A stretch of 64,000 nt of DNA, taken from assembly GCA_030704615.1 (NCBI GenBank), contig CM060731.1:77500001-77564000 (forward strand), in the 5' to 3' direction. This DNA is from Takakia lepidozioides (lineage: Eukaryota > Plantae > Bryophyta). Below the pieces are notes generated by a model. The model made no database searches. It saw only the letters and a list, made by a program, of their open reading frames with translations, and was not told the origin of the DNA. The position numbers and the translations under genes were made by a program. Numbering within the stretch: position 1 is the first letter of the stretch; each line of letters begins with the position of its first letter. Below are positions 5,191 to 47,300 of the stretch, piece after piece.

Positions 5191-5356
5191 TCGCTGCCCC
5201 AAAGGAATCTCCTATGTGATGAAGAGGATGGAATTCAGCACAATGAAGAAATAACAGGTGAGGTGCACTGCGGGGGAGGACAAAGGCTCGGAGGGCAGAG
5301 CTTCGGCGGGAGGAAAGGAAGGATGAGAAGGACTTGATGGAGCAGTGGAAGCAGAT

Positions 5357-7631
5357 ATGCTCTGTGGGTTTGTGCGAAGGTTTATAACTAAGAGATTTCA
5401 GTCATGCAGGATGGCAGGGTTGAGGCAGGCACAATCATGCGAATCAAGCACCTCCACTATGGCCACTGGTTTTGGAGGTAGACCCAAAGAGGGAGTCAAC
5501 AAGAATTCTTCTGACAGTTGTGGGGATGTGAGGACTCTATGCAAGGCAGGACAGTTGAAAGAGGTGGTACACAGTTTGAACCGAGGAGATTTTTCCGCAG
5601 ACTCCAGTACTTATGTCTCTCTCTTTCAGGAATGCATCAAGATGAGAGGCCTAGCACAGGGAAAGGAGGTGCATGCCCACATCATCCAAAGTGGATTCAA
5701 GCCAAACACCTTCCTGCTGAACAGCCTTGTCAACATGTATGCCAAGTTGGGAAGCCCAATGGATGCACGCCGAGTGTTTGACAAAATGTCTGAACGAGAT
5801 GTGTTTACCTGGACCATAATGGTGGCAGGATATGCAAAACATGGGTGTGGTAGGGAGGCCCTAGAAATATATAAGCAAATGATACAGGAAGGAGTGACGC
5901 CCAACGGTGTCACGTTCATTTGTGTCCTCAAGGCATGTGCCAGCCTGGCTGTCCTGGGAAAGGGCATAGAGGTCCATGCTGATATCATCAAATCTGGAAT
6001 TGCACCAGATATCATTCTTCAGAATACCCTTGTTGACATGTATGCCAAATGCGGGAGTCTCATGGATGCAATTCAAGTGTTCAACAATATGGCTGGGCGA
6101 GATGTAGTCTCATGGAACACAATGATTGCAGGATATGCTCAGCATGGGTGTGGTACAGAGGCCCTCAAGATGTATGAAGAAATGATACTTGAAGGGCTCT
6201 CGCCAAACAGGGTCACGTTCATCTCTGTTCTCAAGGCATGTTCCAGGCTGGCAGCCCGGCGAAAGGGCGAAGAGGTCCATGCTCACATCATCAAAGCTGG
6301 AATTGCACCAGATGTCATTCTGGAGACGGCCCTGGTTGACATGTATGCCAAATGTGGTGACCTGAAGAGTGCATGTCAAGTGTTCTGTAATATGGCTCAA
6401 CGGAATGTGGTCTCATGGAATGCCATGATTACAGGGTACGCCCAGCAGGGGTGTGGTAGGGAGGCTTTCAGAATGTACAAGAAAATGATACAGAAAAGGG
6501 TTACACCAGACAGGGTCACATTCACTTGCATTCTGAATGCGTGTGCCAGCCTGGCTGCCCTGGAAAAGGGCAAGGAAGTCCATGTTGACCTCATGAAAGT
6601 GGGAATTGTGCCAGATATTATTCTGGAGACTGCCCTTGTTGACATGTATTGCAAATGTGGAGACATGGAGAATGCATGTCGGATATTTGACAATATGGCT
6701 CAAACAAGTGTGGTCTCATGGAGTGCAATGATTGCAGGATATGCTCAGCACGGGTGTTGTGGAGAGGCCCTGCAACTATTTAAACAAATGCAACTGAAAG
6801 GGTTGAAGCCAAATTCTATTACCTTTACATGTGTTCTTGCTGCATGTAGCCATGCGGGCCTAGTTGATGAGGGCTGTCACTACTTTGATTCCATGTCTCG
6901 AGATCATGGCCTCACTCCTACAGTGGAGCATTTTGTTTCCATGGTGGTCCTTCTTGGCCGTGCAGGGCGATTGGATGAGGCAGAGGACTTCATCAAGAAA
7001 ATGCCAATCGAACCTGCTGCTGAGGTGTGGCGGGCCTTGCTTGGTGCCTGCAGAATCCATGGAAATGTGGAAGTGGCAGAACGTGTGACAGAATGTGTCC
7101 TCAAGTGGGATCCCCATGACGCGGCAGCTTATGTACTGTTGTCCAACATCTATGCCACAGCTGGCAGGTGGAAGGATGCTGCAAAGGTGAGGAAAATGAT
7201 GAAGTACAGAATGGTCAGAAAGGAGCCAGGTCGCTGCTACATTGAGGTGGACAACCATATACATTCATTCTTTGTACACGACAAACTGCATCCACAGATT
7301 GGGGAAATCCATGCTGAGCTGCAGAGATTGTCTGGGCAGATGAAGGAGGCCGGGTATGTGCCTGACACGTGCTTTGCATTGCACAATGTGGAGGAGGAAC
7401 AAAAGGAATTTTCTCTTTGCCACCACAGTGAAAAGCTGGCCATCTCTTTTGGGCTCATCAGCACTCCCCCTGGGACGTCCCTGCGGGTCATCAAGAACCT
7501 GCGGGTGTGTGGTGACTGCCACACGGCCACCAAGTTCATCTCAAGGATTGTTGGGCGAGCAATTGTTGTACGGATACCACCGCTTTCACCACTTCCAAGA
7601 TGGGGTTTGTTCTTGTGGGGAGTACTGGTGA
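5357..7631 (+). CDS. PLS-class pentatricopeptide repeat protein with E and DYW domains (organellar C-to-U editing factor type); frameshift at ~7574-7580
   Basis: Intronless, with ~101-aa P-L-S triplets (LVDMYAKCG / VVSWNAMI.GYAQHG / VTF..VL.AC). Has an E domain, PG box (KEPGRCYIEV), HHSEKLA and CGDCH deaminase motifs. The terminal RFHHFQDGVCSCGEYW* is in another frame. Start codon uncertain (5357 or 5411). Confidence 0.93.
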
Positions 7632-8256
7632 GATACTCTTCATAAAGTGTAAGCAAAGAGTAGATAAAGAATGTCCTTGTATGCTTCTTGTATGCCTCAT
7701 TGTGCAGCATTCCTTTGGTTAGTTGGCTCTCCTGATCCAGTTGCAAGAGCTCCTGTCCCCTGATCCCAAGCAGCTTATCAGACACTCTGCAAAATTTATA
7801 CAACATGTAAAATTCCAGAACCTAAAGAATGCCTCAAAAACAAAATGCTTGTGGTGGTGGGTGTCTTCCATTTTTTTTCTTTATTTTTTAATCTTAAGAG
7901 GAAACCTGGGAGAGAATGCTCACAATTCAGGCCCTTGAGGAGGGGCCCCTTCAAATAAGCCATTGGGCACACAAGAGGCGAAGGGCACGCCCGGACTGTC
8001 ACGGTTGTAGAGTCGGTGTTCGGTCGAGGGAAGAAGGGTAGATTCAACCTGCTTCTGAGATTCCTGTTTTCGGTTTCATTTTGAAGACTCCACTGATTTC
8101 ATACATCTGGGATCTTGACGGAGCTTGAGAGCCTGTCTCTGGAAACTTGGGCGGTCTTCTTTTGCCAGTGCACAGCCTAGACAGGAAGTTTGTAGCTATG
8201 GTGACTCCATGAACACAGACATCGGTGACCACCGCCCCAGCGGCTCGTGCCCTGTT

Positions 8257-8410
8257 GCACGTGGATCAGAGGCTATTCGATTCGCCCTGGCACAGACACG
8301 TCCATGGTCGGAAATGGTGGATCGAGCGTCGTTTGGCAGGCCCGAATCTAGCAGCCGCCTTCGCAAGAATGTGAAGTATTTCCACTACAGCATTGTTGTA
8401 ATGGCGGCGT
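8257..8410 (+). pseudogene. PRA1 (prenylated Rab acceptor 1, B-type) N-terminal fragment
   Basis: TRPWSEMVDRASFGRPES-SSRLRKNVKYF resembles the PRA1.B motif RPWxELxDRSxFxRPES...SRLRKNxxYF. It has an internal deletion and no transmembrane remainder. Confidence 0.7.
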
Positions 8411-9214
8411 CAAGACGAGGTTGGGAGACGGAAAAACAAGTCATGTAGCTACAGTGTCAGGAAATTGTTGGATGCGAAATGCTGAAGGAAACCTGACTTT
8501 ATACACACATAACAAGTCAGATGATTTCTGCAAGATCTCTTCAGAATATTGTCTATCTCGCTTATGGTGGAGGAGTAGGCTCAGCACTGGTCGCCTGTGC
8601 TCCATTACACACAAATTCAAAGGCACGAGTAAACATCTTTTTCACAACTCCAAAATACATGACTTCATTGGAGAATGCAACAGAGGACTCCTGAAAATCT
8701 GTGAGCTGCACATGTAAATTATTATGCAGCCATCAAAGATATCCAAAAAAACTGCTGTAGAATGAAACAGACACCCAAAGATATGCATTGTCCAGTTTGT
8801 TTTATTAGTGCATGGTACGCGATTAATACATATCACTCCTGCCGGCTTTTTTTGAGCCTTCTCGTCATTGCTTATAAGGGCCAGATTTCTCAATCGCTAG
8901 CTTATCTAGTGGAGGTATAGCAGGATCTTACTCATTTTTGGCACCAATGCATGGTCTCTCCCTTACTTATAGGGAGGAGCCAATAAAATTTATCTGGCAG
9001 GGCCTTACTAAGTCCCCTGGGAAAAAATACTTATCAAAACTTGTTAAGCCTTGAAGGAGAGGGAACCAGAGCGAGAGAGAGGGGAGGGGGCGGGGGAAGA
9101 GATCCAAAATACAGGGATCCGGAGAGACCCAGGGAGGGGGGAAGAAAGGAGGAGGGAGAAGGAGATTCTTTACGTTTTCCAAGGAAGGAGGGACAGGGAG
9201 ACTGTGAGAAGAAG

Positions 9215-10133
9215 ATGTCGGGACCTCTGGCCAGAGCAGGAAGCTATTTTTTCGCCAAGCGTGCACAAAAGGAGTTGGATTCTTGGGGAAGTGATGTCAA
9301 TGTAATTCTCCTCCTTTCTCTAACCTTCGCTTTCTGTTGGGTTTTCTGGGATGACGTTGGTGTACTCTTCCAGAAACCCCATCTAAGTATTAGTCTGCTG
9401 GGTCTTTGGAAAATGCGTACATCATGTTAAACTTCTCATGCTTTTAATGCAGATCTTGAAAAATGGTGTGTATGGCTGGACGGAGCAGTCCATGTCTAGC
9501 AGCGTAGAAGAAGGTGGCAAACGTTTCATCAACAGATTAAGAGGTTCTATCTCTCTCGACATTGTGCTATCACTCAGTGCATGTAAAATCTTTGCTCAAC
9601 TGTTGTGAGACTTAAATGCTACTGTTATGTGAGCCTAGTCGATGTGGTAGGCTCTGAGTTACTGGTTTGGGCTATTTTGAGGTTGCTGCAGTGGTTACAG
9701 GTATATAATAGCTATGGCCAGCATTTTCTTTTGGAGCTCAAGTGTACCTTAGGGTTTGAGTGGAGATGGCAACTTTTTTGACTGAATACACCCATCAGGA
9801 AGAGCAACTTTGGTGGAGGTTGAACCTGAAAGATGTCTCTCTTGGATGGAAGTGGTAATTGAGGCTTGAAGTAAGGAACATAAGAACCAAAAACGAAGGA
9901 AAAATAAAGGAAAAAGAAGAACGAAGAGGAAAGAAGAACAAACAAGGAGCTGGAAGAAAATGTATTTAGTGAGAGAGAGAGAGAGACAGATTTGGAGTGG
10001 TGCTCAGGCTAAATGAAGGTGGGTGTGGGACAGGAAAAGTGCAAACACCGCTGCCAGATCTCCTGCAACGCTATGAGCTTCCAAGAGGAACATTTCCTAA
10101 AAATGAATTTGATGAAGCCACTGGAAAGATGAC
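9215..10133 (+). pseudogene. DUF538 family (At5g01610-like) gene, first 2.5 exons only
   Basis: GT-AG exons 9215-9301, 9489-9543 and 10034-~10133 splice in frame to MSGPLARAGSYFFAKRAQKELDSWGSDVN-SMSSSVEEGGKRFINRLRG-KVQTPLPDLLQRYELPRGTFPKNEFDEATGKMT. Homology then stops; ~4 aa are missing before EFDE. Confidence 0.8.
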
Positions 10134-11611
10134 AAATCGGTTAACCAAGGCTCAAGGTGCGCTAGTGCATGCAACTTCAGCCAAGGTGAGTTTCTCGGCA
10201 TCTACATTGGAGCTGTAGCTCCGTCTAAAGCACGGCGGCGCCTCTCGAAGGCCTTAGAGACGAGACGCCGTGTCATGCATAGGATAGTTGTTCTGCGCAA
10301 GCAGCGAGAGCAGGCCTGGCAGAGTGAAGTCGGCCGTCTGGCATTCCAGGCATGGACCCACGGTTATCGGAAGGCCCTACATACCCTTGGGTCAAACATG
10401 AAGGCGAAGAAGGCAGTGTTTGATAAGGCTACAGAGTCTGGCATGAAAGCTGCCTTTGATCTAGAGTATACGATGCCAAGGGAGAACCTCAAGAATCTTC
10501 TAACCCAAGAGAAAGATCGCTTCTCCCGCCTGGGGTGGGACTATATTCCCGCTCCTGTGAAAAGGGCTTACGAAAATCTTATCCGGACTATGGAGGAGAC
10601 ATGTGAAGAGCTCAATGGTGGAATTCACGAGGATCATCCTGGTGGTTTTGCAATTGACAGTTGTCAGGATCAGGAAGACCCTGCTTTCCTTGGAGTAGAT
10701 GAAGATGTAGAAGATCACTTTCAGAAAGTGAAACCTAATACTGATATGAAGTATCATAAGGTCATGGATTTGATAGCTGACCAAATGCACTTGCAGCAGC
10801 GTATGATCGTATCAAATCCAGAGGTCCAAGGATGATCTTAGGCGGGGATACTGAATTGGACCCTCCGGGAGAGGAAGTGGTCTTACACTCTCTGGAGGTT
10901 ATCAACTGGGGATGGTTTGAGCACACTGCAGATCAACTGCATGCTGGGACATACTCATTCAAACCTGCGAGACAAGTGAGCCTCTTGAAGCCAGGAAAGC
11001 TGAGGGAAAAGAGACAACTTATGTTGATTGGTCTTGGGGACCAAATAGTACAGGAAGCTGTCAGAGAGGAATTAGAGAGGATTTATGAACCCACATTCTC
11101 GGAGGATGCACATGGGTTCCGACCCGGGAAGTCCTGTCACACAGCACTGAAAAGACTGAGGTCTGGATGGAAAGGAACCGCCTGGTTTATCCAGTTGGAC
11201 TTTCAAAAGTGTGATGATACCTTGATTCAGGAAAGGCTCAAATCCATTCTTTCGGAGAAAATACAGGATCAACAGTTTATGGATATGTTGACACAGATGT
11301 TCAAGGTGGGTATTGTGAGTGTTGGAAGACATACATGTGAGGGTGGAAGCGAACTATCACCTCTGTTGTGTAATATCTACTTTCAGCAACTGGATAAAGA
11401 AGTAGATCAGATTAAGAAAGAGTGGAATACAGGAACTAAGAAATGGAACGTCGATCCAGAACTACAGAAGCTAGTTGATGTCCGGGTCAGGTACATCAGA
11501 TATGTGGATGATTTTCTGATTGGTGTCGCTGGGAGCAAGGCGACTGCACTTGAAGTCCTGAAAAGGGTGAAACATTTCTTACACTCAAACCTAAAGCTGT
11601 ATCTCACCTAA
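10134..11611 (+). CDS. Group II intron maturase / reverse transcriptase (MatR-like), permuted domain order, two 1-nt frameshifts, no X domain
   Basis: RT0 L.AAYDRIKS (~10791), RT2 DQIVQEAV..LE.IYEPTFSEDAHGFRPGKSCHTAL, RT3 WFIQLDFQKC, RT4 GSELSPLLCNIYF..LD, RT5 RYIRYVDDFLIG and RT6 FLHSNLKL. An RT7-like VEFLGIYI lies upstream at ~10186-10208. Confidence 0.85.
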
Positions 11612-12159
11612 AGCTGCTTCCTACCTGCTTCACTTCTTTTGGGCCACTTGTAAATGACTAGACTTGCTTGTTTCCTGTGCTTTTATTAGGTCTCTACTAT
11701 GTTCAGAGCTGGGTGGTGATGGCTGTGAGAGATGCAGGAGGTTACGGTCAATCAGTTTTATGGGGTTCTACTCATGGGTCTTGCAGAGAGTGACCTTTGT
11801 AGTGTGTGTGCGTGCACTGTCTACAAAGTCGCCATGTTGTGATTGTCAACAAGAACTACGTGTGCAGCAGGAGCCACTCATGCCATTCATGTCTTTGGAC
11901 ACTATACTGGGTAAAATTGGCCTCGGACAGGCTACTCACACTTCAGTCAGTAAAAATGTCAGAGATTTAATACCACAGCCAGAGTGACAAACTAGAAAGC
12001 AACCCTTCTGGCGGTTGTAATAACATGGAAGAAAGTCTTTGATAGAATGGAATCAATTCATTCTCACCAAATATCATCCTGATTATACAGCTATGGACAA
12101 TCTGCTCTCTGTGGAACTCCATGAAACTGGGATTGACACAATCATATCTGCAGCCAGTG

Positions 12160-12463
12160 TCAAAACTGGGCTCCTTCATAAGACTGACCAAAACTCCAAC
12201 CCGCAGGAGCAACATCCATGGATGTTAACGACCTCCCATCAGAAGTGGTAACAAGAAATGATACAGCTTGTCCCACGAACTTGGTGCTGCACTGCCAGTT
12301 CTGGCTCCAGTTTCTTGACATTGGAACCCAATTGGCGTTGGATCCTTTCATCGAAATTGAGCTCACATCACCGGTACCACCCACATTGGTGACAAGCACC
12401 AGATTGAAGAATGGATTTCCATTAATTGTGAAACGTATTCCCCCCGCCTTCACACAGGCAGTT
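12160..12463 (-). pseudogene. Alpha-expansin terminal exon (orphan)
   Basis: [29 protein letters not shown]...[10 protein letters not shown]...[12 protein letters not shown] preceded by the acceptor ctttcag. No upstream DPBB-domain exons found in 12.5-16 kb. Confidence 0.85.
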
Positions 12464-14089
12464 CTGAAAGAAAACATCCAGAATTGTTAATAGCAATCGT
12501 TAACATGCAAGCAAAAACGGGGGAGCCGCGTTTCTGGGAAACAGTTGAGCTCACCACCTCAAGGGATTTCCAGGATTTAACCTACTGCTTATGAGTATAC
12601 AAGGAAAACAAGCAGTTAGTCGCGTAATGGCACACCCTAAACGTCTAAGTAAAATTTTTTCTTAAAATATTATATTGAAATAAGACAATCACACATTCAA
12701 ACTATATTTTAAATTGCATAAGAGAAAATTGTGAGCAGTCGCTCCCAGGTTTCCTTTAAAAAAAAAAAGAGAGAAAACATTATTTATTTTTTTATTTATA
12801 AACCAGGGAAAGGCGGCCCTGTCAGAACTTTATTGATGAAAGTTAAATTATTGATGTATGATATATATATATATATATATTGAGGAACAGGGACGGACCC
12901 TTGAGAACTTTATTAAATGATTATTTAAGGGAAAACAATTAAAACCCTTTAAATGCCCTCAGGCTGCCATAAGGCATAACACACGGAGGACCGTGCAGGA
13001 TAGGTCCGGGACCATAACCGAGAGAGGACTCTGGAATGAACTGCATTTAGAACCCACAGGGACTCGATGCATTTTCTAAAACCTAGAAGACCTTGGTAAG
13101 ATCCGCCAGAAACCATTATCCGTAACGGAGGTAGGACTGGATCTATGATAGTGGACAGAACTGAGAACAGGGAAGCAGAAGGATGGTGAGGGTGCATGGA
13201 GGAGGCTGGGAGAGCAGGAGAATAGCAGGGCGAATCTGATTGCTAATTGCCTGCCCTGGAGAGAGCCAAGAGTCTAGCTGTGGAAATGAAGACGAGTTGC
13301 TGAACCTGCTCTAATATGCCTCCAATTAATCTCTGTTCTGTCAAATTCTGGGGAGGCTGAAGAGGTAACTCCTACTTCCTTGCTAGCAGGAGGGGATTGA
13401 ATCTGCCCAAAGACGGGTGAGGCCAACAACTTTGCAAATGAGTCCGTGCTTGATGATATTACAAAACTGATCTTCAGATTTACTAATTATTAAAATATTG
13501 AGATGCTTGTTGAAATATTAACTGAAATGTTGAAATACTTGTTAAAGAACTAGTAAAATATAAAATTCTTGCTGGCTGAAATACTGGAATACTCGCTGAA
13601 AAACTGGCTGAAATACTGAAATACCACCTGAGCCTTATACACATATGCTGCAAGAGATAGTCCAAATGCTACCTCTAAGAGGATTCACAAGTTCACTTGA
13701 TAGCCCAAAGGCAGTGGATACTTTGCTGGAATTTCATGATAGATTGCAAGGCAGGGAGCGTTCCCATCTCAAGATATAAGAATACCTTAAAGTAACGGAA
13801 GAAGGCTGTCTTCACAAGTTTTTGGAGAAGTGGGTGAAGGAACATGACCAACTTAAGTTCGTACATGACCAACTTACATTGATACATGAGCCGTTTTAAA
13901 TCCTCATGAATGTTGCTCCTCATCCATGTCATTCATCCGTTTGGGAAGTGGGGATCGCTACCCAATATCCAGCGGTTCACATTTATCCTTGTTTTCCCAC
14001 TAGCTCCCTTTCCCGTGCTATGTTGAGATCGGGGAGAGGTTCCCATGCTTAAAGTAACAAGTTGTAGCGCTTGATTGCTTTGAGAGTCG

Positions 14090-14619
14090 TCTATTGGTGA
14101 GACTTCCAGTACAAATAGACATATTTGCTGAGTCAAAAAGACATCGATCTTGAATCATTCTTGGCGTTGAAGACTATTCGTTGAGTTCTAAATCATGCCT
14201 CCATACCATGTAGCCTCTAGGGTACTGTCCGCAAACCAAAAGCTGAGTTCCTATAACTGCTGACTCCTTGTCAGAAACTTCAAAAGTATAATCCATAGGA
14301 TAGCCTGACAGACAACGCCAACGTGTACTAACGGAATCAAACGCCCACCACTTCCGTGCACATGAGAGGCTGTACATTGTGTGCAGATCAGCCAACATGT
14401 AACCCATTCCTCTTTGATCTCTACCCGTTTGTGAGTCTCAAGGACATCGTTGCGGCCTTCGTCATCAACCACCGCTAGCGTATTCTGCCATTTCTTATAA
14501 CCACCTTTCAAGGGTAAATAATAAGAGCGAGGCACCCGTGCAACGCATTCTAGTATCACATGGTTTGTTAATCCCGGAATCAAGGAGTTGTCCTTCGACT
14601 GGTCCTCCGGCTCTGCCAT
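14090..14619 (-). pseudogene. F-box/kelch-repeat gene remnant
   Basis: F-box LIPGL...LECVARVPRS, then a frameshift into WWAFDS..RWRCL...SDKESAVIGTQLLVCG, an in-frame stop, and MIQDRCLF (kelch). Confidence 0.8.
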
Positions 14620-16906: not shown

Positions 16907-18456
16907 ATGGCATTGAGACAGGAAACTATGGCAGGAAAGCAAGAGGAGGAAGTAGAAAAACAAGAAGAGGACGTATACTTGGTAGGAAAACCAGAGGAGG
17001 AGATATCTAACTTAGTGAGACAAGAGTATGAGTCTGTGACAGTGAAAGAAGAGAAGACAGCTGCATTAGTGAAAGCACATGAATTAACGGAGGACAATTT
17101 TGGTTTACCAAAATCTAATGTCTGTAAGGACCAAGGCAACTCTTCTCCAAAAGAAGAAACTAGAAATTGCCATTGCGGATGTCTAAGCTACCTAACCAAG
17201 GTGACAAAGCCCAATCACAACAATGGCAAACTGTTTTTTGGTTGCGGGGCATGGACACCCTCGAGGGTCGGAGATGTGGCTTTTTTGAGTGGTATGATGA
17301 GGAACAGATGCACAGGAATGAGAAGGTACCGAAACAAGAGGAGGAGGTTATCATGGCAGTAAATAGAAATGGGGAGGCACTGAAACAAGAGGAGGTCATC
17401 ATGGGAGTGAAACAAGAGGAGGTGCCTATCTTAATGAAACAAGAGGAGGTCATCATGGGAGTGAAAGAAGAGGGGTTGCCTATCTTAATGAAACAAGAGG
17501 AGGTAATTATGGGAGTAAAACACGAGGAAGTGCCTACGTTAATGAAACACGAGGAGGAGAATGGTTCTTCTGGTGCTGGTTCCTTATCAAAGGCTTTACC
17601 AACGTCTAATGGCCAAGAGAACTCTGATTTGAAAGAAGAAATCAGAATTTGCTACTGTGGATGTGTAAGCCATCTCACCAGGGTGACAAAACTCAACTAC
17701 AACCATGGCAGAATGTTTTTTGGTTGTGGGGCATGGACACCCTCTGCAGGACGAAAATGTGAGTTTTTTGAGTGGTATGATGAAGATGAAGGGCACATGA
17801 ATGGGCAGGGGAAGACAATGGGCATGGAAACAGAATATCTCCTCAAACTTCAATTGAATATGGAAAGTAGTGATAGCCTGAAAAGAAAGCATAGGAAAGA
17901 AGTCACCCAGGAGGAGGAAGATCATTCAGTGGAGATGGGTTGCAAAAGAATGCATGTGGCAGAAGACTCCACAGAAGACTCCACAGAAGACTCCACAAGG
18001 ATATGTTATTGTGGAGCAGTGTCTTACAAAACTAGGGTCACAAAGGCTAGTTGTAACAACGGCAGGATTTTTTATGGATGTGGCCGGTGGACACCTGAGG
18101 GGAGGAAATGTCAATTTTTCGAATGGCATCCAGATCATTATAGTGCCCCAAGGGTATGGGATAATTTTGTAATTAGCACCATCGCAGCAAATTATGCCCT
18201 TCAAGCTATGAGAAAGAATCTGTTTGATTTCGATGAAGAGGATGAAGAGCAAGGACCCTATTCGGATGAAGAGGCTGGATCCTGCGGAGTCGAAGAGGAG
18301 CTCTCTGATTACAATGAAGAGGATGGAGAGGATGGCCCTGATTCCACTGAAGAGGATGGCTGCAGTGGAGTTGAAGAGGCTGGGTCTGACTTCAATGAAG
18401 AGGATAAATCCAGCAGAGTTCAAGATGATGGACTCAGCCAGAACAATTCTGTGTAA
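16907..18456 (+). CDS. Protein with three GRF-type zinc fingers, KQEE repeats and an acidic tail; 1-nt frameshift at 17263
   Basis: Three copies of CxCG...N.G(R/K)xFxGC...CxFFEW. ORFs 16907-17362 and 17167-18456 join if one G is added at 17263 (~516 aa). Confidence 0.75.
17380..17560 (+). repeat. Coding tandem repeat (54-nt period, KQEEVIMGVKQEEVPILM, ~3 copies)
   Basis: Directly visible in the DNA and the translation. Confidence 0.85.
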
Positions 18457-44373: not shown

Positions 44374-47300
44374 CTAGCTGTCGTGCCCAGCAGGTTTTCT
44401 CCTGATTGCAGAAGTCTGGATAAGAGAGAATACTAATAACACTGGCACAGCCCAGGCGTAGGCAGGGGATGCCACCAAAGCACTTGATCCATAGGCTCCC
44501 AACAGCGTGGAGCATAACTGCAACCAACCCCCATCATTAATCTCACTGTCAGCATGTCCTTGAGCAAGCATGCAAGTTGGTCACTTTCGCACAAAAATAC
44601 ATGCGGATCAAGCAGTGTGTGGATGACAAGGTTAGGGAATGTGACCATGCAGTCAGGATAACTGAGGGCATTTTTTTAGGAGTCCAGGCGCACTTCTGAA
44701 CTCCTGCCCAGTCATGGTTGTTAAATCTGAAAGGGACAGTTACATAATCAATTGCCAAAGCTAACAAGGAAAGCTTACCCGCCAGTGAATCCATGCAACT
44801 GACAAGCACCCTACAAAGAGGGCTTTTCGAACCAGCCGGTTGCACAGGCTGCAATAGTCCGTGTCCTCTTCCTTAGCAAGTAGCAATGTCTCAAGCTCTC
44901 CTTCTGGCTGAGCCATAGCCTCTTCCTTAGGCGATGGCTGTGGCACTTCACCATTTGTCTCATCAGAACTGGATTCACCACTACCATTACCAGCTTCAGT
45001 TTGAACAGCAGTTTTCTTTGGATTCTTCCAGATGGACTTACACTTTCTCTGTGACCCGCATTTACCCACAGTTGCAACATGAAACTCGCATGCAGCTCGC
45101 TCAGCTGAGAGAGCAGACAGCATTAAAACCAATGGAAAGAGCACTGCATACACAAATGGCAGAACAATGCCCATAATGTCCGGCACACCTAAACCGGACT
45201 GCTGATGTACAGTGGAGGTATTGGAAGGACGAACGGTCCAACCATGGAGCGACATGTAGCCTTTTGGGTAGTCATCCGCAAGTACTCGCCCGGAGAACCA
45301 GGGGAAGAGAATCAGATATGTAACGTACGCCACCAAAGCCACCCATAGATGTGTGTTGCGTGAGCCCTCTAAAACAGCCCAAAAAGGAACCTTGACAACT
45401 TTGACAATATTGCTGTCTGAGGAAGGGGTGAAGACAGACATAACCCACTCCTCGTAAAGACCCCTTCTTTCAAGATAGAGATGGAAAATCTTCGGGATGA
45501 CTAGCAATGCTAAGATAAAAAAGAGCATTCCCCAAAGTAGAATGGGATAGAAATTCTCCCATTGAAAGCCCATGACAAGGTATCCCAGCCACGTTATCCT
45601 GAAAGCACCCAGTTTCCCTTTCACAGAAAAGGGACGCAATTCACTCTCCGCAACACTTTCAGTAGAGTTCTTCACTTGAATTTGAAGCCAGTAACGTGTT
45701 GCTGAATCATCCACAAACTTTTCACTCTCCCAAGGAGCATTGTAGTAGTGTGCTCCACCTTGAACTCTTCTGTGTCCACCCTTAACAAGCTTCATCTCTA
45801 TCTCATCAATGAGGACCAAGGATCTAGATGTGAAGTCAAAAATTCTAGCCATAACAGAGATGGGGGGTGTCTCAGCAAATACAAGAGCTCGGATTGAATC
45901 CACATCCGATTCTCCTGCTAGCACATCACTGGAGGCCCGAAGCATGGTTAGGGAGTCAAGAGGGTAGGTTGGCAGTATGATTGTAGGCATCACAAACTCC
46001 TCAGAGTTGTCATCCTTGTGGATAAGCTCAATGTCAACAAAAGAGGTGTATCCATTATCAACTGCCAGTACACGCATCATGCGGCTAACACGCCAGTCTC
46101 CCGTCTCCCACTCCCAAAACTCTCCCATTTTCTTTGAATCCTGCGAGGCACGCCTGCAGACAAGTTACTCATCAGTACAATTTGGGTGGAAACAGATATA
46201 GGAAAGGGAAGCAACATTTATCTCCCACAGATAGCTCTGGTATACAGAGCCTTTTGGGAAAGCTCACAATTTTTGGTAACCTCAAGAGGGATGGAAAATC
46301 ACCAGGCATTTAGCTTCATGACCAACTTGGCAAGCTTCACGTTGGAGGACTCTTGAGGGACTGATGGAGATTACCAGGAAGGTACGCCTTCAGGCCTGGA
46401 AGGGGTGCTTCCTAATCAAAACCTTTATGGACTATTTTGAAGGGATTCCGGAGAGATTCTACCATTCATCACACAAAACAGAATGAAGGACCCCCTGCAG
46501 ATACTGTAATGCGATCATTCCTCTGAGTGTGAGGGCTACCTGCTATAGGTGAAGGATCTGTGTCCAAAGGTAACAAGGAAATTTGTGATATTGAGGCCTG
46601 TCCTTGCACTTGTTGAAAAGCATGAATACTGCTTAGGTGATTTTTTTTCTTTGCTCAAGAGGGCACATACTTGTGATGCTTGTAGAGATGCCGTCCAAAT
46701 TTGGTGTGCAAGTGCCCACAGAGATACGCTGCAATTTCATGCTTAGCAAAAATCTCCTCTGGACGTTTCCCTGTGGATGTCGAAGCAGTGAATGACATGG
46801 GAAAGTGACCGAATACAATTTTTGTCACGGGTTCTGAAGTGCCACGGTCCCATTGGCTGAGCTCTGTGTCCAGCTCTAATAAGCTGCTATCAGTGGGATG
46901 CCCAAACAGGTTGGAGGGTCCCCTCAACCCCACACTCATGGAGTCATCCACTCCTACAAACAAGTGCTTTCGACCACCATGCGCCTACAAGAACATCAAA
47001 GAGGAACAATCAGCTTTCTATTCAACACATTGGACTCTAACTTGAAAACTTCATAACATCCAACCATGCTCAAGTGTGTAGTCTAAAGTACTATGGAACT
47101 CAAATTACAAGATTCCCCATCTCTAATACCAATACAACACTACAACGTGACCCAGCCATGGCTATGCTATAGCCGATTTACTGACCATTTTATAGGTTCA
47201 TAAAGATTACAGTTACAACTTGACACTTCCTTACAACGATCCCAACACTCTTTGGTTGCACTATGCTGTAACCACCACTACTCACTTGGTATCTCTTGCT

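What the first reader, a model, noticed from the sequence alone, without database searches (positions are those of the whole stretch)
9215..11611. Spliced DUF538 exons fused in frame to a nuclear MatR-like group II intron maturase
Seen: DUF538 exon 3 runs without a stop into maturase sequence at ~10134. With two single-G corrections the three exons give one ~573-aa ORF that retains a YVDD motif. The segment VEFLGIYIGAVAPSKARRRLSKALETRRRVMHRI closely recalls the post-RT7 region of mitochondrial MatR (VEFLGTVIREVPP...RELEKRLRVKHRI, from memory). No group II ribozyme flanks were recognised. Inference: an organelle-derived maturase that has acquired a host promoter and N-terminus, possibly for targeting, which is a route to new nuclear splicing factors. 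The 4-aa deletion in the DUF538 part argues for some real decay.
Basis: partly seen in the sequence, partly recalled or inferred. Interest (0 to 1): 0.8.

Follow-up and report, generated by a model that had tools for sequence, protein, structure and literature searches.

The report
Chimeric copy of permuted moss maturase
A moss-like nuclear locus joins the first exons of a DUF538 gene to a copy of an old, apparently undescribed moss gene family whose maturase (reverse-transcriptase-like) motifs stand in circularly permuted order and which lacks domain X. The copy is transcribed, but two one-base deletions break its frame, so the fusion itself is probably not a working protein.

Summary
From about 10131 the sequence is a group II intron RT/maturase (LtrA E 3e-36, YVDD kept). 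No ribozyme RNA is present.

The "RT7 before RT0" order is real and conserved. The locus belongs to a nuclear gene family found in Sphagnum, Physcomitrium, Ceratodon and other mosses. Family members begin with RT6b-RT7 plus a basic linker, continue with RT0-RT6a, stop just after "LKL" and have no domain X. The window's copy is sister to all the others and alone keeps the three catalytic Asp residues.

The DUF538 exons are specific to this locus. A 97%-identical transcribed copy in the same species has unrelated sequence upstream of 10131.

The first one-base deletion (10188) is present in every DNA and RNA contig. The second (10780) is polymorphic.

RNA contigs cross the fusion point, but none covers exons 1-2. 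Differences between the copies are 10 of 11 synonymous in the RT part.

Best reading: a young, transcribed chimeric duplicate that is probably decaying. The scan also flagged the permutation separately on this same stretch (s1-473843).

The parts
9215..9301 (+). Exon 1, DUF538 (At5g01610-type) N-terminus, starts with ATG, donor GT at 9302
   Evidence: Only PDB hit is At5g01610 residues 7-29, colinear, E 0.36. No RNA contig covers it in X5 or X6.
9453..9543 (+).
   Evidence: No Pfam or PDB hit of its own and no RNA coverage. This is the least supported part.
10034..10130 (+). Exon 3, DUF538-derived part (KVQTPLPDLLQRYELPRGTFPKNEFDEATGKM)
   Evidence: At5g01610 residues 49-86, E 9.3e-5, 4-residue gap. 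X5 RNA contig record 9 begins at 10076 and runs across 10131.
10131..10188 (+). Maturase RT6b segment (TNRLTKAQGALVHATSAKV), still in the DUF538 frame. This frame ends at stop 10216-10218. 10131 is also where the 97%-identical variant transcript starts to fit.
   Evidence: Aligns to Sphagnum SKSIRAQGALVHAMSSRV and canonical EKDSVVHVTSGHV. X6 record 17 fits only from 10131.
10188..10189 (+). Frameshift 1: one base missing in the Lys codon of KVKFLG. It creates AAG|GTGAGT.
   Evidence: Ceratodon GCCAAGGTGAAGTTTCTGGGC against window GCCAAGGTGAGTTTCTCGGC. No contig of X1, X5 or X6 shows an indel here.
10188..10600 (+). RT7 (EFLGIYIG) plus conserved basic/helical linker, in a second frame. In canonical maturases this stretch lies between RT7 and domain X.
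   Evidence: P0097 residues 391-531 map to 10191-10610. Representative search, Pfam maps, alignment A2.
10601..10779 (+). Acidic, fast-evolving junction between linker and RT0. Probably a remnant of the old C- and N-termini joined by the permutation.
   Evidence: 8.6% divergence from the variant, 15 of 18 changes non-synonymous. Variable in all relatives.
10780..10781 (+). Frameshift 2: CCC shortened to CC in the conserved ADP of RT0. Polymorphic.
   Evidence: An extra C is present in X5 record 10 and in X1 DNA record 5, and absent in X6 record 17. Relatives read ADPxxLxAAY.
10781..11611 (+). RT0 to RT6a in a third frame, with catalytic Asp in RT3 and YVDD in RT5. Ends NLKLYLT, then the stop codon.
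   Evidence: RVT_1 2e-17. LtrA residues 73-340, 2.6e-36. Alignment A1. 10 of 11 differences from the variant are synonymous, P 6.6e-6.
11612..11851 (+). 3' untranslated stretch shared, with indels, with the variant transcripts
   Evidence: X6 records 20 and 21 and the loose end at 11669.

Best explanation
The locus is a young chimeric gene copy. Its 5' part (promoter region, exons 1-2 and the first 97 bases of exon 3) comes from an At5g01610-type DUF538 gene that has lost its 3' half.

From about 10131 it is a copy of this species' member of a moss-wide nuclear gene family derived from a group II intron maturase. In that family the order of the RT motifs is circularly permuted: RT6b-RT7-basic linker, then an acidic junction, then RT0-RT6a, then stop. 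Domain X is absent.

The family most likely arose by tandem duplication and fusion of an X-less 'RT-half' maturase gene, which mosses also keep in canonical order. This step is inferred.

The join at 10131-10135 is in frame and is transcribed. However, a one-base deletion at 10188, present in all sampled sequences, ends the DUF538-led frame at 10218. A second, polymorphic deletion at 10780 splits the rest. The full fusion protein is therefore most likely not made from this allele.

The RT part was under strong purifying selection until recently. The copy is thus either freshly decaying or still gives a product that does not need the upstream frame.

What the family proteins do is inferred: organelle-targeted RNA-binding splicing cofactors without polymerase activity, since all members examined except this one have lost the catalytic Asp residues.
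For: - DUF538 origin of exons 1 and 3.
- Maturase identity.
- Permuted order relative to canonical maturases.
- Same breakpoints in Ceratodon KC19_9G055100, P. patens XP_024400042.1, two Sphagnum paralogues and metagenome/SRA contigs. The ORFs are uninterrupted (Sphagnum) or carry one intron (Ceratodon chromosome, nuclear neighbours).
- No domain X in the window, L001, L007, P0146 or P0152.
- Tree: the window is sister to all permuted members (94/83). Together with the X-less canonical-order P0153/P0154 they form a 100/100 clade.
- DUF538 exons are absent from the relatives' loci.
- The variant transcript (X6 record 17, 33 differences over 1048 bases) carries 405 unrelated bases upstream of 10131, and their last 30 bases occur nowhere in the window.
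- X5 record 9 (3 differences) crosses the junction.
- Deletion 1 is in all contigs and deletion 2 is polymorphic.
- Synonymous/non-synonymous pattern.
- X5 and X6 behave as RNA. They cover only exonic stretches, and the 56-base stretch 13784-13839 has unlike sequence on both sides, as a spliced exon would.
Against: - The first deletion is shared by the variant copy, yet the RT part shows dN/dS near 0.03 between the copies. That argues that function survived the deletion, or that gene conversion spread it.
- Only 30 bases of the variant's upstream sequence are known. Translated (EEYEEDSTG), they resemble both the DUF538 stretch (NEFDEATGKM) and the Sphagnum N-terminal region, so a diverged DUF538 leader on the other copy is not excluded.
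- DNA depth in X1 is near single copy over much of the RT part. The 'second copy' could therefore be a divergent haplotype rather than a paralogue.
- X6 record 17 is a mosaic of variant and window letters and may be an assembly chimera.
- No RNA evidence exists for or against splicing of exons 1-2.
- AlphaFold2 on the Ceratodon protein was poor (pLDDT 58, N-terminal 77 residues below 50). It gives no support that the N-terminal RT6b-RT7 strand pair completes the palm.
- The species is coded. 'Moss, probably Takakia' rests on earlier scan notes and on the tree position.
Confidence: 0.57

Rival explanations
1. Working fusion protein. The three DUF538 exons and the whole maturase are translated as one protein of about 585 residues, and the two frame breaks are sequencing or assembly errors.
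For: The join is in frame. Residues on both sides of each break are conserved. The break at 10780 is absent in X5 record 10 and X1 record 5. The RT part is under purifying selection and keeps its catalytic residues.
Against: The break at 10188 is present in every Illumina-derived contig of one DNA run and two RNA runs from different studies, so it is not an assembly error. No RNA covers exons 1-2. The DUF538 piece is a truncated third of its domain, and no remainder lies downstream.
Confidence: 0.05
2. The maturase part is still functional but independent of the DUF538 leader. It would be translated from a start or splice variant downstream of 10188, for example Met 10275, where relatives have Ile. 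Or it would come from exon 2 joined to an AG at 10184-85, which would be in frame. The DUF538 exons would then serve only as promoter and 5' leader.
For: 10 of 11 differences in RT0-RT5 are synonymous although both copies carry the 10188 deletion. All three catalytic Asp residues and an RVT_1 score of 64 bits are retained, against 24-32 bits in other mosses. Alleles with an intact 10780 exist.
Against: Several out-of-frame ATGs lie upstream of 10275 in the transcribed stretch. The AG at 10184-85 has a poor pyrimidine tract. RNA contigs show no joint in this region. Such a product would lack the RT6b (and, from Met 10275, also the RT7) strands, which are highly conserved in the family. The window allele also has the 10780 break.
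Confidence: 0.22
3. This is not a duplicate but the species' single native orthologue. Its normal 5' end is the captured DUF538 leader, much as one Sphagnum paralogue is modelled with a uL11 N-terminal fragment. The variant contigs would be divergent haplotypes.
For: X1 DNA depth is near single copy over the RT part. The window sequence is sister to all other mosses' genes, as an orthologue of an early-diverging moss would be. Sphagnum models CAK9203289.1 and CAK9863887.1 carry a foreign N-terminal fragment. The translated 30 bases upstream in the variant faintly resemble the DUF538 stretch.
Against: Identity drops from 97% to unalignable exactly at the DUF538/maturase boundary. The variant's upstream 30-mer is absent from the window. 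X5 holds two sequence types in one sample (records 10 and 11).
Confidence: 0.15

Closest known systems
Moss permuted maturase-like proteins: P. patens XP_024400042.1 (LOC112294103), Ceratodon purpureus KC19_9G055100, Sphagnum CAK9201220.1 and CAK9203289.1. All are annotated only as uncharacterized, hypothetical or 'reverse transcriptase domain-containing'.
   Same: Same two breakpoints: start at ..GALxHAxSxKVKFLG, end 3-6 residues after LKL. Same linker-acidic-RT0 junction and no domain X. 43-54% identity in RT and 39-51% in the linker.
   Different: The window copy has a DUF538-derived leader instead of a presequence-like N-terminus and lacks the intron found in L001, L007 and Ceratodon. It keeps the RT3 Asp and YVDD, which the others lost. 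It carries two one-base deletions.
X-less 'RT-half' moss maturase in canonical order (P0153, P0154, P0165; JGI peat metagenomes).
   Same: Closest canonical-order relatives (100/100 clade). They also end after the linker without domain X and have an acidic stretch before RT0.
   Different: The motif order is RT0-RT7-linker. The permuted family reads as if two such genes in tandem had been fused and trimmed.
Canonical plant nuclear and mitochondrial maturases: nMAT1-4, MatR, and Selaginella XP_024524942.1. LtrA is the structural reference.
   Same: RT0-RT7 motifs, GFRPGKSCHTAL, SPLLCNIY, YxDD and the basic post-RT7 stretch.
   Different: These proteins have domain X after the linker and canonical motif order. 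Named nMAT and MatR sequences could not be retrieved here, so the nearest angiosperm clade is not determined.
At5g01610 (PDB 1ydu), a DUF538 protein
   Same: Exon 1 matches residues 7-29 and exon 3 matches residues 49-86.
   Different: Only the first half is present (residues up to about 86 of 170). The beta-rich core is missing, and there is a 4-residue gap.

Membership tests
Group II intron reverse transcriptase/maturase | RT motifs 0-7 with the conserved palm and fingers sequence | tested here: met
   RVT_1 64 bits, E 2e-17. LtrA 2.6e-36 over residues 73-340. RT7 plus linker match canonical maturases. The order of the motifs is permuted.
Group II intron reverse transcriptase/maturase | Catalytic Asp triad (RT3 D, RT5 YxDD) | tested here: met
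   LDF in RT3 and YVDD in RT5 align with the LtrA catalytic positions.
Group II intron reverse transcriptase/maturase | Domain X (thumb/maturase domain, Pfam Intron_maturas2) C-terminal to the RT | tested here: not met
   No Pfam hit in any piece. tblastn with the X-bearing canonical proteins P0097, P0095, P0109 and P0110 finds no X match in the window.
Group II intron reverse transcriptase/maturase | Encoded inside a group II intron (ribozyme domains flanking the ORF) | tested here: not met
   Rfam E<=1 search of 7000-14000 finds nothing. The neighbours are nuclear genes: a PPR-DYW ORF and an expansin.
Moss circularly permuted X-less maturase-like family | N-terminal RT6b-RT7 (ALxHAxSxKVKFLG) followed by basic linker, then RT0 | tested here: met
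   Alignment A2. In the window the RT6b and RT7 halves lie in different frames because of the deletion at 10188.
Moss circularly permuted X-less maturase-like family | ORF ends 3-6 codons after the RT6a 'LKL' | tested here: met
   NLKLYLT-stop in the window. The relatives read LKLRFH, LKLQAFEEG, LKLHGP and LKLQMP.
Moss circularly permuted X-less maturase-like family | Falls inside the family clade | tested here: met
   Sister to the 14 other members (94/83). Inside the 100/100 clade with the X-less canonical-order genes.
DUF538 (PF04398) | Pfam gathering score (25 bits) over the 112-position domain | tested here: not met
   18.1 bits on ORF 9997-10215 and 13.3 bits on the DUF538 part alone. 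Only about the first third of the profile is matched.
DUF538 (PF04398) | Specific similarity to a known member | tested here: met
   At5g01610: exon 3 at E 9.3e-5, and exon 1 colinear as the only hit. This makes it a fragment of a DUF538 gene, not a DUF538 domain protein.
nMAT1-4 / MatR orthology | Groups with a named nMAT or MatR clade in a tree | not testable with these tools
The one aimed at named maturases (query P0097) returned only four hits. No named MatR or nMAT sequence was available.

The most novel reading that the evidence does not exclude
Mosses carry an ancient, functional, circularly permuted maturase: RT6b-RT7-linker moved in front of RT0-RT6a, with no thumb/domain X. It would work on mitochondrial group II introns together with a separately encoded domain X protein. 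Its N-terminus has been replaced repeatedly by captured host exons: a uL11 fragment in one Sphagnum paralogue and DUF538 here. The member in this early-diverging moss still has a complete catalytic triad and may be the least degenerate survivor, perhaps still able to polymerise.
Probability: 0.3. Interest if true: 0.8.

Novelty: new variant of a known kind. Interest (0 to 1): 0.58.

Why it matters
Nuclear maturases are the proteins through which plants keep their degenerate mitochondrial group II introns splicing. They are also models for how intron-encoded proteins became general splicing factors.

A family kept across mosses in which the RT fold is circularly permuted and the thumb is missing would be a natural experiment on which parts of a maturase are needed for RNA binding and splicing. 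It is present in the tractable model Physcomitrium patens as an uncharacterized gene, so it can be knocked out and localised directly.

The locus itself is a clean, datable example of chimeric gene birth, or birth and death, by joining the 5' half of one gene to the body of another. Both transcription and frame decay are visible in public reads.

I found no paper describing permuted plant maturases in the searchable library. Guo and Mower 2013, which lists Physcomitrella nuclear maturase loci, could not be read.

Tried and rejected
- Pfam alone leaves the DUF538 label unproven. I nearly rejected it until the PDB comparison.
- ESM Atlas searches of the exon 3 ORF and of the linker gave nothing.
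- The word-index search with the RT ORF reached only 35%-identical bacterial-type fragments, because of its length window.
- The search with canonical P0097, meant to fetch named MatR and nMAT sequences, returned four hits and was wasted.
- I looked for remains of RT6b-RT7 after the stop in L007. The tblastn extension past the stop shows no real similarity.
- I looked for the missing DUF538 3' half downstream and found none.
- I looked for terminal inverted or direct repeats that would mark a transposon capture (Pack-MULE or Helitron style) and found none.
- Retrocopy origin was rejected. The missing intron is also absent from the uninterrupted Sphagnum ORFs, so intron absence may be ancestral.
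- A splice junction at 10131 was rejected: there is no AG there, and the contig differs at 33 positions.
- AlphaFold2 of the Ceratodon protein with a 22-row alignment was too poor to judge packing of the N-terminal strands, so no fold search was run.
They were searched only piece by piece, by reference.
Full report
**What is in the sequence**

- Exon 1 is 9215-9301, followed by GT.
- Exon 2 is 9453-9543, flanked by AG and GT.
- Exon 3 starts at 10034, after AG.

The exon 3 frame stays open to a stop at 10216-10218.

A second frame is open from 10116 to 10835. It reads GEFLGIYIGAVAPSKARRR....

A third frame is open from 10781 to 11611. It reads PNALAAAYDRIKS...YVDDFLIG...NLKLYLT-stop.

One continuous ORF therefore needs two one-base corrections, at 10188 and 10780. 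It would have about 585 codons.

Every search was done piece by piece, by reference.

**Is the upstream part DUF538?**

Pfam alone says 'perhaps':
- 18.1 bits (E 0.0038) for the ORF 9997-10215.
- 13.3 bits (E 0.12) for the DUF538 part alone.
- Nothing for exons 1 and 2.

Part of the longer Pfam alignment also lies on residues that are really maturase.

The comparison with solved structures decides it. Exon 3 matches At5g01610 (1ydu), a DUF538 protein, at residues 49-86 with E 9.3e-5. Exon 1 hits the same chain at residues 7-29. That is the only hit in the PDB, and it is colinear. Exon 2 has no hit.

So the 5' part is the first half of a DUF538 gene. The second half is not found downstream.

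**Is the downstream part a maturase, and is the odd order real?**

The RT ORF scores RVT_1 2e-17. It matches LtrA residues 73-340 at 2.6e-36.

The 239-residue frame before it has no Pfam family. An exhaustive profile-free search places its residues 23-165 in the middle of long proteins. Pfam maps these as RT, then this stretch, then Intron_maturas2. An example is P0097, with RT at 150-396, the match at 390-531 and domain X at 565-660.

tblastn confirms the inversion. P0097 residues 150-374 fall at 11012-11599, while residues 391-531 fall at 10191-10610. No domain X is found anywhere in the window.

The same search also found proteins that begin with this linker and continue into RT0, just as the window does.

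**A conserved family**

Following those hits gives complete proteins with the same layout:

| Protein | Source | Length |
|---|---|---|
| KC19_9G055100 | Ceratodon purpureus | 530 aa |
| XP_024400042.1 | Physcomitrium patens | 542 aa |
| CAK9201220.1 | Sphagnum, paralogue group 1 | 631 aa |
| CAK9203289.1 | Sphagnum, paralogue group 2 | 672 aa |

Several contigs from SRA assemblies and metagenomes carry the same gene.

All of these proteins share three features:
- They start the conserved part at ..GALxHAxSxKVKFLG, which is RT6b-RT7.
- They run through a basic, helical linker and a variable acidic stretch into RT0.
- They stop 3-6 codons after the 'LKL' of RT6a, exactly where canonical maturases continue with EKTxIxH...FLG.

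The Sphagnum ORFs are uninterrupted. Ceratodon has one intron and lies on a chromosome between a tRNA synthetase gene and a kinase gene.

None of them has domain X. Their RVT_1 scores (24-32 bits) sit at or below Pfam's threshold, which may explain why they are annotated as hypothetical.

The nearest canonical-order relatives are X-less proteins that end after the same linker (P0153 and P0154). In a maximum-likelihood tree of the RT part:
- The window is sister to all 14 other permuted sequences (94/83).
- This group joins the X-less canonical pair with 100/100 support.
- Within the permuted group the branching order is Sphagnum, then P0092, then the clades containing Ceratodon and Physcomitrium.

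That order is what a gene inherited vertically from the moss ancestor would show if the window comes from an early-diverging moss. Earlier scan notes guess Takakia, but I could not check the species.

The simplest origin is tandem duplication of an RT-half gene, with fusion and trimming. The acidic junction would be what is left of the old termini. This is inference.

**What is special here**

(a) The leader. The DUF538 exons have no counterpart at the relatives' loci. The Ceratodon and Physcomitrium models instead start with a basic N-terminus free of acidic residues, which looks like a presequence. I judged this by eye only.

(b) The active site. The window keeps the RT3 Asp and YVDD. The others read VADE, FADE, YAED, YGDE or YAEE and have lost the RT3 Asp.

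(c) Two one-base deletions.
- At 10188, Ceratodon reads GCCAAGGTGAAGTTTCTGGGC where the window reads GCCAAGGTGAGTTTCTCGGC.
- At 10780, the conserved ADP of RT0 has lost a C.

**Reads**

One call laid contigs of four public runs of the same coded organism on 8700-14600.

X5 and X6 behave as transcriptomes. They cover only exonic stretches, and the 56-base stretch 13784-13839 carries unlike sequence on both sides, as a spliced exon would.

Both runs cover 10076/10131-11669 but not exons 1 and 2.

X5 record 9 (525 bases, 3 differences) runs from 10076 to 10600. The DUF538/maturase joint of this locus is therefore transcribed.

X6 record 17 (1453 bases) fits 10131-11178 with 33 differences. Its first 405 bases fit nothing in the stretch, and their last 30 bases occur nowhere in the window. 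So a second, roughly 97%-identical copy or haplotype with a different 5' part is expressed. Identity breaks exactly where the At5g01610 similarity ends.

No contig of any run, DNA or RNA, has an indel at 10188, so that deletion is real. At 10780 an extra C is present in X5 record 10 and in DNA run X1, so that deletion is polymorphic.

**Selection**

All 29 differences of X5 record 10 are listed by the tool.
- In RT0-RT5 (10781-11443), 10 of 11 are synonymous. About 24% would be expected by chance (P 6.6e-6).
- In the acidic junction (10571-10780), 15 of 18 are non-synonymous, at five times the divergence.

The RT part was therefore a constrained coding sequence for most of the time since the copies split.

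This sits awkwardly with a shared frameshift at 10188. Three readings are possible:
- The deletion spread by gene conversion or recombination.
- The useful product does not depend on the upstream frame.
- A third, intact copy exists that was too divergent to be laid at the 95% threshold.

I cannot decide between these with the data at hand.

**Verdict**

The reading 'organelle-derived maturase that has just acquired a host promoter and N-terminus' is only partly right. The capture of host exons is real and in frame. But the maturase body is an old nuclear gene of a permuted, X-less moss family. The DUF538 piece is a truncated gene half, not an evident targeting signal. And the frame is broken in all reads.

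I rate a transcribed, probably decaying chimeric duplicate as most likely (about 0.55-0.6). A leader-independent functional product comes next (about 0.2), then a single native orthologue (about 0.15).

The more important result is the family itself. I could not find it described. The scan flagged the permutation separately on this same stretch (s1-473843).

No Rfam group II intron RNA is present, and no repeats mark a transposon capture.

Noticed in passing
L008:5445-7770 and protein P0188: One Sphagnum paralogue of the permuted maturase lies 290 bases downstream of a Ribosomal_L11_N exon. In NCBI models (CAK9203289.1, CAK9863887.1, 672-673 aa) it is fused to that truncated uL11 N-terminal fragment. 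This would be a second case of a captured host leader on this family, if the models are right.
   Followed up: partly
window 5345-7645 (+): Intact 766-codon PPR protein with E, E+ and DYW deaminase domains, 1.6 kb upstream on the same strand. It is probably an organellar RNA editing factor and is not linked to the finding by any evidence.
   Followed up: partly
window 12160-13840 (-): Expansin gene (Expansin_C 2.4e-28) converging on the 3' end of the maturase copy. RNA contigs show a 56-base exon at 13784-13839 with spliced flanks.
   Followed up: partly
window 8897-9093 and 12640-12836: Short stretches with 35- to 70-fold excess depth in DNA run X1 (about 1900 and 3600 against about 50). They are probably small dispersed repeats flanking the gene. 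They do not match each other as direct or inverted repeats.
   Followed up: partly
window 9040-9210 and 9870-10000: GA-rich low-complexity tracts, one just upstream of the DUF538 start codon and one inside intron 2.
   Followed up: no
window 10275: The conserved Ile of RRRVIHRL is Met (ATG) in this species. This creates the first in-frame ATG after the 10188 deletion.
   Followed up: no
window 17167-18456 (+) and 44764-46128 (-): ORFs with two GRF zinc fingers and with TMEM62 Ig-like and C-terminal domains. Both look like ordinary nuclear genes.
   Followed up: no
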